This document shows positions 28,004 to 32,340 of a DNA stretch of 64,000 nucleotides, piece by piece. The notes below the pieces were generated by a model. That model ran no database searches, was not told where the DNA came from, and saw nothing but the letters and a program-made list of their open reading frames with translations. A program made the translations under genes and the position numbers. Numbering within the stretch: position 1 is the stretch's first letter; each line of letters begins with the position of its first letter. The stretch is from contig OU015566.1 in assembly GCA_907165135.1 (NCBI GenBank), positions 10,664,001 to 10,728,000 on the forward strand, written 5' to 3'. This stretch comes from Oikopleura dioica (lineage: Eukaryota; Animalia; Chordata).

Positions 28004-30137
28004 ATGTCGGTAGGAATGCTACAGGAAAGTAAATTATCAATGACCCATTTTATTAGATTTCTAATTCAGGAACCAAAAGGATTAGCCGAAGAAATGGCTA
28101 CTTCAGCCTTCGAATACGATCCTCACAATTTCTGGCATGTTTATAAAACCCTCAGAAATATCGAAATTCAAGAGCCGAACGAGGTCATTTTCGACAGATT
28201 TACGAAGGACAGACAAGTCTCATTCTCTTGTAACTTTGAAGAATACTGTTCAGAGGTACAGTTAGTAAAGCTTCTTCTGTAAAACAGCTGTTTAAGTGGA
28301 AGACAAAAACCTCAATCAGCTCCTCTTTTGAAGAGAAAATTTCACCGGGAAAACGTGAAAATTTCTATGTCACAAGTGGACTCGCTCGAAACAGTGCTTT
28401 TTTCAACCCAACTGTTGATGTGAGCACGTTGAGCACAAATGGCCATTACTTATCATCAATGAGCTCGAGGGTCGCACCTGGACGGGTTCAACTTTTGGAA
28501 ACTCCGGAACTAGCTCTAAATAGCAATCAATTAGTCCGGCCTGGATTTCTTATCTTGGGTGAACTCTTGCACATTCTCTGACTCACGTTTTCTGAGCTAG
28601 AATGAAAAGACCATCGATTTGGACTTCCATAGCTCGTACTGCTTTAGTTTCTGGTATTCTCACTTCGGTATCCCTTCAGGCAGTTTCGTAATTCACTTGA
28701 ACCGCGATGGAGTTTCTAAGCCTGTGGAAATCTTTGGAATCGGCGCGTATTACCCAGATAAAGCAGGAAGGGCTGAGAACGCTAATTCACCTCCACTAGA
28801 AATGATCGCGGGATAAGCTCATTTTAAAGACCAGAACCTTGGTTGGAAGACTTACGAGGACAGCTTAATCGCCCGTGATACAGAGGACTGGCGGTATTTT
28901 CAAATTCAATTTGATACAGAACAAAGCGAAGACTGGAAGGGAATGTCGATTTTATTTCAAAATGTGAGAGGAGAGAATTTCCTGTCAAACATAGCGCTAG
29001 ATGACATCCAGCTGAATCCCAAAGACTGTCAAATTCTTCCTGAACCCTTTCCACTTCCACCTGACCTGCCCGCTCCTCCGGCCAAAGTTGATCCGACAAT
29101 CCCAAGCAAAATGTTCTTCGAAGACTGGAAACTCTTTCCGCCTGAAAAACGACTCCAATCTCAACTTGAATACGACGAATCGTTAAAAACTGGCCAAAAA
29201 ATATCCATCCGATTTTCTCAATGCGGAGGTGAGGAGATTTACCAAGAAGGTGGAATCTGCTGCAATGGAAAAATGCATTCAAGGAGATCGGGAAACAACT
29301 GCTGTAGGAAAAAGCCGTTCTTCACGAGGAAGCAAATTTGCTGCGGGAAGGAGGTTGCCGACAAGAGGAAATATGGATGTTGTAATAAAGAGCTGTATTT
29401 ATTAGCGGATAGTTTTTGCTGTGGTTCAGAGATGAGGTTTGTTAAAAATTACCGATATGAAACTGCCGCCATTATATTAGAAATTGAAAGCATTTTACTT
29501 AAATGGAATGCCTCAATAGCATCAGCGCTATTTTCAAGCCAAAAATGACCATAAAATAGATCGTTCCAGATTTTATCCCTTAGCAATCTACCTCATCTCG
29601 TTCTCAGAAATCCTCCCTCGATCTCAGCTGGAGCGCTGCTGCCCCGTTACCCAGATTCGTTACAATCCATCAATCCATTTTTGCTGTGGTGGGCGGCTGG
29701 TAGACAAAGAGCTCAAAGAAAGAGGCTATCAATGCTGTGACAATCAGATCTTCGAGCCAGGAAAGAAATCGGGTGTGCTGAGTGGACAACATTGCTGTGG
29801 ATCTGGAGCTGGTCAAAAGCTTTTGTCAAAGGAGCAAGGTTGCTGCAAAAATAGAGCCGGAGCCAAAGGATACGATCCTACAAACGAGTTCTGTTGTGCG
29901 GGGAAAGTCTATCACTCGAAAGTCCATGAGTGCGTGAAACCCTACAATAAAAAAGAGTTCGCCAAGAGGATCTTTGGTGGTGATCGCGCTCCTGGAACCT
30001 CCCCAGGAGAAGATAGATGGATGACGCTACACGATTTCATCGAAAATGAAGATAAGGTAAAGAAAAGCTATAATTACGAAGAACTCGATGAAGTGATAAG
30101 ACCTGACTGGAGAAGCTTTTATAATTTATATCACTGA
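28004..30137 (+). CDS. Extracellular MAM-domain protein with galaxin/usherin-like di-cysteine repeats
   Basis: MAM hallmarks (SCNFEE, YCFSFWY, IALDDIQL..C) are followed by repeated CC motifs (ICCNG, NCCRK, ICCGK, GCCNK, FCCGS, FCCGG, QCCDN, HCCGS, GCCKN, FCCAG). AATAAA at ~30154. The true 5' end is uncertain. Confidence 0.75.
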
Positions 30138-30318
30138 AAACTTTCTCTTGCAGAATAAAAGTAAAACATTAATTGACGTGAGCATGATTTGAGGGCATAT
30201 CTGAGCAGTTAAAACATTATCTATCTCCGGGCAAATATATTCGAGCTCTTCAGATTATGAGAGTGAGTAATTTTGACAAAATTCAAAGCATAAAAGCCCG
30301 AATTTCATACATACATCC

Positions 30319-30556
30319 GGGCTGGTAGATAGCTCAGTTAGCCTCCACGGGGCGGCTTCTTATATGCTCATGCAGGAGCATGTCGCGCGCTATAAAATAT
30401 GGATCCTGCGTAAGCTGTTCGAAGCCCGTCTTTGACTTCGGATGGGCGCTACCAGTCTGTTCCCCCTGAAGGAGCCGAAAGTAAGGGGAGAACTTATAGG
30501 CTAAAAACTCCTAACTGCAGATAAAGGGGTTCTCTGAAGTGGAGGGCAGAGTTTTT
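30319..30556 (+). ncRNA. Candidate Pol III structured RNA, vault-RNA-like core 30319-30458
   Basis: ATAAAA at about -29; A-box TAGCTCAGTTAG (30330-30341); B-box GTTCGAAGC (30417-30425). 10-bp terminal stem GGGCTGGTAG/CTACCAGTCT, internal hairpins, and first T5 at 30552-30556. Confidence 0.55.
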
Positions 30557-30970
30557 ATAGACTAAATAAGTACCAGAGCGCAACATCAATGCTCACGTCT
30601 TTTTAACTTGATTTTTGCGTATTTTATAGAACTTATCTAAGTTATTTTTAGTATATTTGTATATTGACACCATGAATAGAGACAATACTTTGTAGATACA
30701 GGTAAAGTACTAATATTGCCTAGGGCCACATAATGAGAATGTGTGAAATTGCTATGTGTATGAAATTGAATTGAATTGAAAGTGTATGCTTTTCATGTTT
30801 TCTGTAGTTCCGAGGAGGATGCAAATAGTTGTTGTTGGGGGTTGAGTTGATTATTTACGTAGTGGTTTTCCTAAACCTGCCTAGGTGGAAGAAGAACGGT
30901 TAGGCGAACAGAGGGGAGAGGAAAACGTCTAAGAAGGCGTGGCAGTCACGGGACACAGAAGATTTCAGGT

Positions 30971-32340
<1,370 letters not shown>

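What the first reader, a model, noticed from the sequence alone, without database searches (positions are those of the whole stretch)
30319..30556. Vault-RNA-like Pol III gene between the convergent MAM and Rab6 genes
Seen in the sequence: a TATA-like ATAAAA at about -29, start GGGCTGGTAGA, and A-box TAGCTCAGTTAG. Three internal hairpins follow (e.g. ATATGCTC/GAGCATGT, GCCCGTCT/GGATGGGC), with B-box GTTCGAAGC and a 10-bp closing stem ending GGGCGCTACCAGTCT. Established knowledge (from memory): human vtRNA1-1 begins GGCUGGCUUUAGCUCAGCGG and ends GUUCGAGACCCGCGGGCGCUCUCCAGUCCUUUU, so both ends match in order. Unlike known vtRNAs, no T-run follows the stem; the first T5 is ~95 nt further on after two more hairpins. 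Inference: a 3'-extended vault-like RNA.
Basis: partly seen in the sequence, partly recalled or inferred. Interest (0 to 1): 0.75.

Follow-up and report, generated by a model that had tools for sequence, protein, structure and literature searches.

The report
Paired unclassified Pol III RNA genes
The flagged element is real: it is one of two neighbouring, diverged copies of an uncatalogued gene for a folded RNA of about 220-240 bases, built to be read by RNA polymerase III in the tunicate Oikopleura dioica. Its front half looks like a vault RNA, but it fails the vault RNA family test, and a better vault RNA candidate lies elsewhere in the genome.

Summary
A second, diverged copy (unit 2, 31400-31616, same strand, antisense in a Rab6 intron) shows it is not chance.

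- **Shared features:** AAGCATAAA at -33 to -25, a GGG..TAGCTCAGTTrGCC head, a B-box, a hairpin loop AGCCGAmAG, and the motifs UGCAGAU, GGUUCUCUG and CAGAG plus a T-run. Similarity begins at the TATA-like box and ends at the terminator, so the RNAs are about 238 and 216 nt. The 3' extension is real.
- **Copy number:** head and tail patterns and a head model find only these two copies in 64 Mb, so it is not a SINE.
- **Promoter:** the TATA distance matches this genome's U6, MRP and 7SL genes, and T4 terminators are used there.
- **Vault identity not shown:** the Rfam Vault model gives no hit even at E<=10. The length and the missing T-run after the stem are atypical, and unit 2 lacks the human-like end sequences.
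- **Vault context:** the genome encodes MVP and TEP1. Three tandem 131-159-nt genes on another contig fit vault RNA better, though only one scores (25.6 bits).
- **Other lineage:** a related Oikopleura contig lacks unit 1.

Verdict: a new two-gene Pol III RNA family of unknown job.

The parts
30286..30295 (+). Unit 1 TATA-like promoter block AAGCATAAAA (CATAAAA at -30..-24)
   Evidence: Nine of these bases are identical in unit 2 at the same distance. The position matches the TATA of this genome's U6, MRP and 7SL genes.
30319..30556 (+). Unit 1 predicted transcript, 238 nt, from GGGCUGG to the first T-run
   Evidence: Sequence. No TTTT before 30552. GC is 51% against 41% for the window. Homology to unit 2 spans exactly this interval plus the promoter.
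30330..30341 (+). Unit 1 A-box TAGCTCAGTTAG
   Evidence: TAGCTCAGTTrGCC occurs only three times in the genome.
30417..30426 (+). Unit 1 B-box GTTCGAAGCC, the 3' strand of helix P3
   Evidence: P3 is kept in unit 2 through two double changes.
30319..30458 (+). Unit 1 domain I: a vault/tRNA-like panhandle with P1 (30319-30328 / 30449-30458), P2 and P3
   Evidence: MFE -56.5 kcal/mol, z = -3.06. The minus strand gives z = -1.70. The layout was compared with the Rfam Vault consensus printed.
30459..30493 (+). Unit 1 hairpin H2 (GUUCCCCC / GGGGAGAAC) with loop motif AGCCGAAAG
   Evidence: Unit 2 has a hairpin with a different stem (CUGGGCU / AGCCCAG) and loop AGCCGACAG at the same place.
30516..30556 (+). 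Unit 1 conserved tail: UGCAGAU, GGUUCUCUG, terminal stem CUCUG/CAGAG, T5 terminator
   Evidence: The tail pattern matches only the two units plus one likely chance hit in the genome.
31367..31376 (+). Unit 2 TATA-like block AAGCATAAAT (CATAAA at -30..-25)
31400..31616 (+). Unit 2 stretch analysed, 217 nt; the predicted transcript ends in the T4 run at 31612-31615. Antisense inside a Rab6 intron.
   Evidence: Domain I (31400-31492) folds at -44.3 kcal/mol, z = -5.19, against z = -2.84 on the other strand. The A-box is at 31410-31421 and the B-box-like GCTCGAAAC at 31454-31462.
30114..30123 (+). Left copy of the direct repeat AGCTTTTATA; the right copy AGTTTTTATA lies at 30550-30559. The repeat bounds the stretch of about 430 nt that is missing in the related lineage.

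Best explanation
Units 1 and 2 are two paralogous, probably active genes of an uncatalogued small-RNA family read by RNA polymerase III.

Proposed mechanism, inferred from the sequence:
- TBP/TFIIIB binds the CATAAA box at about -30.
- TFIIIC binds the internal A-box (+12) and B-box (+99 in unit 1, +55 in unit 2). This is the layout of this genome's 7SL gene: a TATA box without a U6-type PSE.
- Transcription starts at the G-run and stops at the first T4/T5.
- The products are RNAs of about 238 and 216 nt, each with a U-tail suited to La-type proteins.

Predicted fold:
- A stable 5' panhandle domain (P1-P2-P3) with the architecture of vault RNA or of a tRNA acceptor/D region.
- A hairpin with the conserved loop AGCCGAmAG.
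- A weakly structured 3' part whose conserved motifs (UGCAGAU, GGUUCUCUG, CAGAG) most likely serve as protein- or RNA-binding sites of a ribonucleoprotein.

What is shown: the sequence anatomy, the paralogue conservation, uniqueness in the genome, and strand-specific folding. What is inferred: transcription, the exact RNA ends, and any protein partner.
For: - Shared blocks run from the promoter to the terminator, with no similarity outside them.
- There are only two such loci in 64 Mb.
- The TATA sits at the same distance as in U6, MRP and 7SL, and T4 terminators are used by U6 and 7SL here.
- Neither unit has an internal TTTT; 11-13% of random windows of that length lack one.
- GC is 51-56% against 41% for the window.
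- The plus strand folds better than shuffles and better than the minus strand.
- P1, P2 and P3 form in both units, with 5 double compensatory changes in the anchored alignment.
- U6, 7SL, RNase P and MRP RNAs are all found elsewhere in the genome.
Against: - There are no expression data.
- Only two sequences are available, and I fitted the structural alignment myself, so the covariation evidence is weak.
- The 3' domain of unit 1 folds no better than shuffles (z = +0.33).
- A related Oikopleura lineage lacks unit 1 at this site, so at least this copy is dispensable or recent.
- No U6-type PSE is present.
Confidence: 0.6

Rival explanations
1. The units are the Oikopleura vault RNAs: 3'-extended vtRNA orthologues that TEP1 binds and that are packed into MVP vaults.
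For: - The genome has an intact MVP gene and a TEP1-type gene with TROVE, DUF4062, a STAND NTPase domain and WD40.
- Domain I has the vault layout: P1, A-box/P2, P3/B-box and a 3' closing strand.
- Unit 1 matches many conserved positions of the Rfam Vault consensus at both ends.
- The genes sit in a small cluster, as vertebrate vtRNA genes do.
- Vault RNA had not been found in tunicates by homology search (PMC5006418).
Against: - RF00006 gives no hit at E<=10 for either unit.
- At about 216-238 nt they exceed the published 84-141 nt (PMC8287541).
- No T-run follows the panhandle.
- The consensus motif GGUUACuUCg is absent.
- Unit 2 lacks the GGCUGG..GGGCGCU.CCAGUC ends.
- The three-gene B cluster on contig 1 fits better.
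Confidence: 0.15
2. The units are decaying or neutral tRNA-derived duplicates. They are leftovers of a Pol III element that was copied locally, may be transcribed at a low level or not at all, and have no function of their own.
For: - Unit 1 is absent from a related lineage, and the indel is flanked by a 10-nt direct repeat.
- The units differ by large indels.
- An 18-nt fragment of the head lies at a third site that does not look like a gene.
Against: - Promoter, A-box, B-box, tail and terminator are all kept, while the rest has diverged beyond what BLAST detects.
- Helices are kept through compensatory changes.
- No internal T4 has arisen in either copy.
Confidence: 0.15
3. The units act through their position, not as RNP RNAs. 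Pol III transcription or the antisense RNA from the Rab6 intron and the Rab6 3' flank would modulate Rab6 expression or 3'-end formation.
For: - Both units are antisense to Rab6.
- Unit 2 fills an unusually long intron, and its terminator lies 3 nt from the Rab6 5' splice site.
- Unit 1 ends about 40 nt from the conserved Rab6 3'UTR.
Against: - The related lineage keeps the Rab6 3'UTR at 95% identity without unit 1.
- Nothing in the units is complementary to Rab6 exons.
- The shared architecture points to a trans-acting RNA.
Confidence: 0.06
4. The resemblance is chance: a GC-rich intergenic hairpin that happens to carry A- and B-box-like words.
For: A- and B-box words are short. The full 238-nt fold is only z = -1.52.
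Against: A second copy has the same ordered blocks, and the combined pattern is unique in 64 Mb, with 0 forward and 1 reverse hit to the control pattern.
Confidence: 0.03

Closest known systems
Vault RNA (Rfam RF00006)
   Same: - A Pol III gene with a TATA-like box plus internal A and B boxes.
- A panhandle in which the 5' end pairs with a segment that follows the B-box.
- A variable centre.
- Genes in a small same-strand cluster.
- A genome that encodes MVP and TEP1.
   Different: - No covariance-model hit.
- About twice the usual length.
- The closing stem is followed by a conserved domain of about 100-125 nt, not by the terminator.
- The consensus motif GGUUACuUCg is missing.
- The vertebrate-like end sequences occur in unit 1 only.
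This genome's 7SL (SRP RNA) gene, as a promoter type
   Same: A TATA box at about -30 without the U6/MRP-type PSE, internal control elements, and a T4 terminator.
   Different: There is no sequence or structure match to Metazoa_SRP. The real 7SL gene is on contig 1 and scores 194.5 bits.
tRNA-led Pol III chimeric transcripts, such as plant tRNA-snoRNA dicistrons and the gammaherpesvirus 68 tRNA-miRNA units (from established knowledge, not tested here)
   Same: A tRNA-like 5' module carries the A and B boxes and drives transcription of a downstream RNA module up to a distal T-run.
   Different: The head is not a cloverleaf (ARAGORN and the Rfam tRNA model are negative). No snoRNA boxes or convincing pre-miRNA lie in the 3' part. 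There is no evidence of processing.
Other unassigned 'tRNA-headed' Pol III RNA genes of O. dioica, noted earlier in this scan (s1-319394, s1-387007, s1-371396)
   Same: The same organism, Pol III anatomy, an A-box-bearing head, often intronic and antisense, and absent from RNA catalogues.
   Different: The head model R1 finds no other locus in the genome, so these two units form their own small family. The sizes also differ: about 216-238 nt against 185, 375 and 410 nt.

Membership tests
Vault RNA (RF00006) | Scores at or above the Rfam gathering threshold (34 bits) with the Vault covariance model | tested here: not met
   No hit at the gathering score in the window. No Vault hit at E<=10 in 501-nt, 161-nt and 236-nt searches around units 1 and 2. 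In the whole-genome scan only 49 of 5159 candidates were scored, and the units were not among the hits.
Vault RNA (RF00006) | Length about 84-141 nt, with the Pol III terminator directly after the 3' strand of the closing stem | tested here: not met
   The first T4+ lies 94 nt (unit 1) and about 120 nt (unit 2) after the closing stem. The predicted RNAs are about 238 and 216 nt. The size range is taken from PMC8287541.
Vault RNA (RF00006) | Panhandle architecture: P1, an A-box within P2, and P3 with the B-box just before the 3' closing strands | tested here: met
   Both units form P1, P2 and P3 in this order, compared with the consensus structure printed. Unit 1 has a 15-nt insertion between the B-box and P2'.
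Vault RNA (RF00006) | Conserved sequence GcGGUUACuUCg following the A-box (Rfam consensus) | tested here: not met
   Unit 1 reads GUUAGCCUCC and unit 2 reads GUUGGCCCGG. The B cluster on contig 1 has GUGGUUACUUCG in all three copies.
Vault RNA (RF00006) | The genome encodes the vault proteins MVP and TEP1 | tested here: met
   MVP is a 734-aa frame with Vault repeats and the shoulder domain. TEP1 is represented by a TROVE ORF followed on the same strand by a 1454-aa ORF with DUF4062, a STAND/AAA NTPase domain and WD40.
Vault RNA (RF00006) | The RNA is physically associated with TEP1 or vault particles | not testable with these tools
   This needs immunoprecipitation or vault purification.
tRNA-derived SINE | Many dispersed copies that begin at the RNA start and carry target-site duplications | tested here: not met
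   Each unit is single-copy by BLAST. Patterns and the head model find two loci only. The two copies share the upstream TATA block, which a retrocopy would lack.
tRNA | A cloverleaf recognised by tRNA finders or models | tested here: not met
   ARAGORN finds no gene in the window. There is no Rfam tRNA hit.
Type-3 Pol III genes (U6, MRP, 7SK type) | A proximal sequence element upstream of the TATA box; in this genome it reads rAACCATAAC at about -70..-60 | tested here: not met
   The PSE-like motif is present upstream of the six U6 genes and the MRP gene, and absent upstream of both units. The TATA distance is shared.
Y RNA | A Ro60 partner is present and the RNA matches the Y RNA model | tested here: not met
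   The only TROVE-domain gene is TEP1-like and has no match to solved Ro60 structures. No Y_RNA hit appeared in the Rfam scans.

The most novel reading that the evidence does not exclude
Oikopleura vault particles, or TEP1 alone, carry this 3'-extended RNA. The family would then be the missing tunicate vault RNA, with an added conserved domain (UGCAGAU, GGUUCUCUG). That would show that the vault panhandle can serve as one module of a larger RNA.
Probability: 0.15. Interest if true: 0.7.

Novelty: new variant of a known kind. Interest (0 to 1): 0.5.

Why it matters
Vault, Y, 7SK and telomerase RNAs have escaped homology searches in tunicates (PMC5006418), yet this genome keeps MVP and TEP1. This report supplies two concrete, testable sets of Pol III genes: this pair, and the three-gene cluster on contig 1. 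With them, the question of which RNA, if any, sits in Oikopleura vaults becomes a simple pull-down experiment. Independently of that, the pair adds one more uncatalogued Pol III RNA family to a very compact chordate genome. It is also a clean example of a TATA-plus-internal-box promoter shared by two otherwise diverged paralogues.

Tried and rejected
**Catalogue and copy-number searches**
- Rfam at the gathering score and at E<=10 on short stretches gave only noise hits (snoRNA and miRNA models at 9-19 bits).
- ARAGORN found nothing.
- SINE or repeat: rejected by single-copy BLAST and by pattern and model searches.

**Known RNAs considered**
- 7SL, RNase P, MRP and U6: all found elsewhere with strong scores.
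- 7SK: there is no GAUC...GAUC hairpin in the units. The genome shows only weak 7SK hits elsewhere.
- Telomerase RNA: unit 1 has only a 6-nt CCUAAC, which is expected by chance and is not kept in unit 2.
- C/D or H/ACA snoRNA in the 3' part: there are no conserved boxes.
- Kinship with the B cluster: the B model R2 gives only noise on the units.

**Comparative data**
- The single metagenome scan returned one contig, and it ends before unit 2. No orthologue of unit 2 could therefore be examined.
- Stadler et al. 2009 on vault RNA evolution is not held in the paper library.

Exons were scanned one by one by reference.

Full report
**Observation**

- CATAAAA at -30..-24 relative to the G at 30319.
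- The A-box TAGCTCAGTTAG at 30330-30341.
- The B-box GTTCGAAGCC at 30417-30426.
- A 10-bp closing stem, 30319-30328 with 30449-30458.
- No T-run until TTTTT at 30552-30556.

The 140-nt core folds at -56.5 kcal/mol (z = -3.06, 0 of 200 shuffles as good). The opposite strand folds clearly worse (-43.1, z = -1.70), and several G-U pairs also mark the plus strand as the RNA strand.

**Genome and context**

The window is contig 4 of a 64.28-Mb assembly in 19 contigs. Earlier agents of this scan name it Oikopleura dioica, and the size and gene content fit. I did not take any contig for human.

The upstream gene ends in galaxin-like repeats. The downstream, convergent gene is a Ras-family GTPase whose exon translations read as Rab6. 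I scanned its exons one by one and did not join them.

**A second copy**

A note on this same window (s1-396788) pointed to a second unit, so I read on. Unit 2 lies at 31400-31616 on the same strand, antisense inside a Rab6 intron of about 320 nt. Its terminator is 3 nt from the Rab6 5' splice site.

The alignment shows these blocks, shared in the same order:
- AAGCATAAA at -33..-25.
- GGG.TG..G.TAGCTCAGTTrGCC.
- A TCGAA B-box block.
- AGCCGAmAG.
- UAAGG and GAGAA.
- UGCAGAU.
- GGUUCUCUG.
- CAGAGUUUU.

Similarity starts at the TATA-like block and stops at the T-run.

**Uniqueness**

- Each unit is single-copy by BLAST in its own genome.
- CATAAA-N28-42-TAGCTCAGTT matches only these two places.
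- The tail pattern matches them plus one likely chance site.
- A sequence model of the promoter and head (R1) finds only the two units, at 53 bits. The next hit scores 13 bits with E = 6.7.
- A third TAGCTCAGTTAGCC site shares 18 nt with unit 1 but does not look like a gene.

This rules out a SINE. The shared upstream TATA block also rules out retroposition.

**Pol III anatomy compared with this genome's own genes**

| Gene | Upstream elements | Terminator |
|---|---|---|
| Six U6 genes | TTTATAA at -31..-25; rAACCATAAC at about -70..-60 | T4 or T7 |
| MRP RNA | TATA and PSE as in U6 | T6 |
| 7SL RNA | CTATAAAA at -31..-24; no PSE | T4 |
| Units 1 and 2 | CATAAA at -30..-25; no PSE | T5 and T4 |

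The two units therefore match the 7SL layout, and they have an A-box at +12 and a B-box. Neither has an internal TTTT. That holds for only 11-13% of random windows of the same length, and their GC is 51-56% against 41% for the window.

**Structure**

- In both units the 5' 18-22 nt pair with a segment that follows the B-box (P1 and P2).
- The B-box is the 3' strand of an inner helix (P3).
- In an alignment that I anchored on the shared motifs, 37 consensus pairs form in both units. Five show changes on both sides, including two in P3 and one in P1. Because I fitted the alignment and there are only two sequences, this is supportive and not decisive.
- After P1' each unit has a hairpin with a different stem but a shared loop, AGCCGAmAG.
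- A short terminal stem, CUCUG/CAGAG, precedes the U-tail.
- The 3' domain of unit 1 is not unusually stable (z = +0.33). Its conservation is therefore mainly at the sequence level.

**Is it a vault RNA?**

For:
- The genome has an intact MVP gene.
- It has a TEP1-type gene: a TROVE ORF followed by a DUF4062, STAND NTPase and WD40 ORF. This is the only TROVE gene found, so there is no sign of a Ro60 gene, which makes Y RNA unlikely.
- Domain I has the P1 / A-box-P2 / P3-B-box layout of the Rfam Vault consensus, and unit 1 matches many of its conserved end positions.
- Tunicate vault RNA had not been found by homology search (PMC5006418).

Against:
- RF00006 does not report either unit, even at E<=10 in very short searches.
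- The predicted RNAs are far longer than the 84-141 nt given for vtRNAs (PMC8287541).
- No terminator follows the panhandle.
- The consensus GGUUACuUCg is missing.
- Unit 2 does not keep unit 1's human-like ends.

**A rival vault candidate elsewhere**

The whole-genome Vault scan led to three tandem same-strand genes of 131-159 nt on contig 1, at 16627221-16628823.

- Their ends are invariant (CAAGGCGCTyTGGCCGAGTGGTTACTTCG ... CCGC..TCGCCTTTTG), their centres vary, and a T4 follows the closing stem directly.
- One copy reaches 25.6 bits with the Vault model, with a local E-value of 7.8e-4. This is below the 34-bit threshold. The other two copies get no hit, and the scoring copy carries an internal T4.
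- A model of this cluster does not recognise units 1 and 2, so the two families are separate.

I rate this cluster a better, but still unproven, vault RNA candidate.

**Other identities excluded**

U6, 7SL, RNase P and MRP RNAs lie elsewhere with strong scores. The 7SK hallmarks are absent. No snoRNA boxes or telomerase template are conserved.

**Other lineage**

- The one related contig I could obtain is L008, from a marine metagenome. It shows 81% protein identity in the neighbouring ORF.
- It lacks about 430 nt that include unit 1 and the roughly 195 nt upstream of it.
- The Rab6 3'UTR next to the gap is 95% identical between the two.
- In the window the missing stretch is bounded by the direct repeat AGCTTTTATA (30114-30123) / AGTTTTTATA (30550-30559). 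This fits either insertion by microhomology or deletion between repeats.

**Verdict**

This is a real pair of Pol III-type genes for an uncatalogued RNA of about 216-238 nt with a vault/tRNA-like 5' panhandle. The function is unknown, most likely that of an RNP RNA. The probabilities of the readings are:

| Reading | Probability |
|---|---|
| Functional, uncatalogued Pol III RNA family | 0.6 |
| Vault RNA | 0.15 |
| Neutral decaying duplicates | 0.15 |
| Acts on Rab6 through its position | 0.06 |
| Chance | 0.03 |

Noticed in passing
G000:C1:16627221-16628823 (L044 1501-1635, L045 1501-1659, L046 1501-1633): Three tandem same-strand genes of 131-159 nt. Their 5' and 3' ends are invariant, their centres vary, they form a panhandle fold, and a T4 follows the closing stem directly. 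CAAAAG sits at -31..-25 in B1 and B2 (not checked for B3). The first copy lies directly after a Rab-like exon, inside an intron. One copy scores 25.6 bits with Rfam Vault, below the 34-bit threshold. This is the best vault RNA candidate I saw in this genome.
   Followed up: partly
G000:C4:11899511-11900235 (L040, L034): The RNase P RNA gene (minus strand, 115.7 bits) and the RNase MRP RNA gene (plus strand, 122 bits) sit head to head, about 200 bp apart.
   Followed up: no
window 30590-31015 versus L008 6336-6744: The Rab6 3'UTR is 95% identical to a related Oikopleura lineage, while the neighbouring coding ORF is only 78% identical in DNA (81% in protein). The UTR is under strong constraint.
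   Followed up: partly
window 30114-30123 and 30550-30559: The direct repeat AG(C/T)TTTTATA bounds the roughly 430-nt stretch (unit 1 plus its upstream 195 nt) that is missing in the related lineage. The event also changed the last codons of the upstream gene (...FYNLYH* here, ...FYNIS* there).
   Followed up: partly
L026 1501-1518 (G000:C1:7418856): An 18-nt exact match to the unit 1 head (TAGCTCAGTTAGCCTCCA) with no promoter, G-start or further similarity. It may be a relic fragment.
   Followed up: partly
G000:C2:6024000-6036200 (L021, L022) and G000:C2:9046996-9049197 (L043 2497-4698): A TEP1-type gene (TROVE, DUF4062, STAND NTPase, WD40) and an intact MVP gene. TEP1 is the only TROVE-domain gene found, so Ro60 appears to be absent.
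   Followed up: partly
L014-L019 upstream regions; L034: The six U6 genes and the MRP gene share a PSE-like motif, rAACCATAAC, at about -70..-60 and TTTATAA at -31..-25. This is a usable signature for finding type-3 Pol III genes in this genome.
   Followed up: no
G000:C4:9425167-9425209 (L041) and C4:12926932-12927386 (L042): These are the only hits to the 7SK model, at 26.5 and 22.7 bits, below the 35-bit threshold. They are possible leads to the 7SK RNA that has not been found in O. dioica.
   Followed up: no
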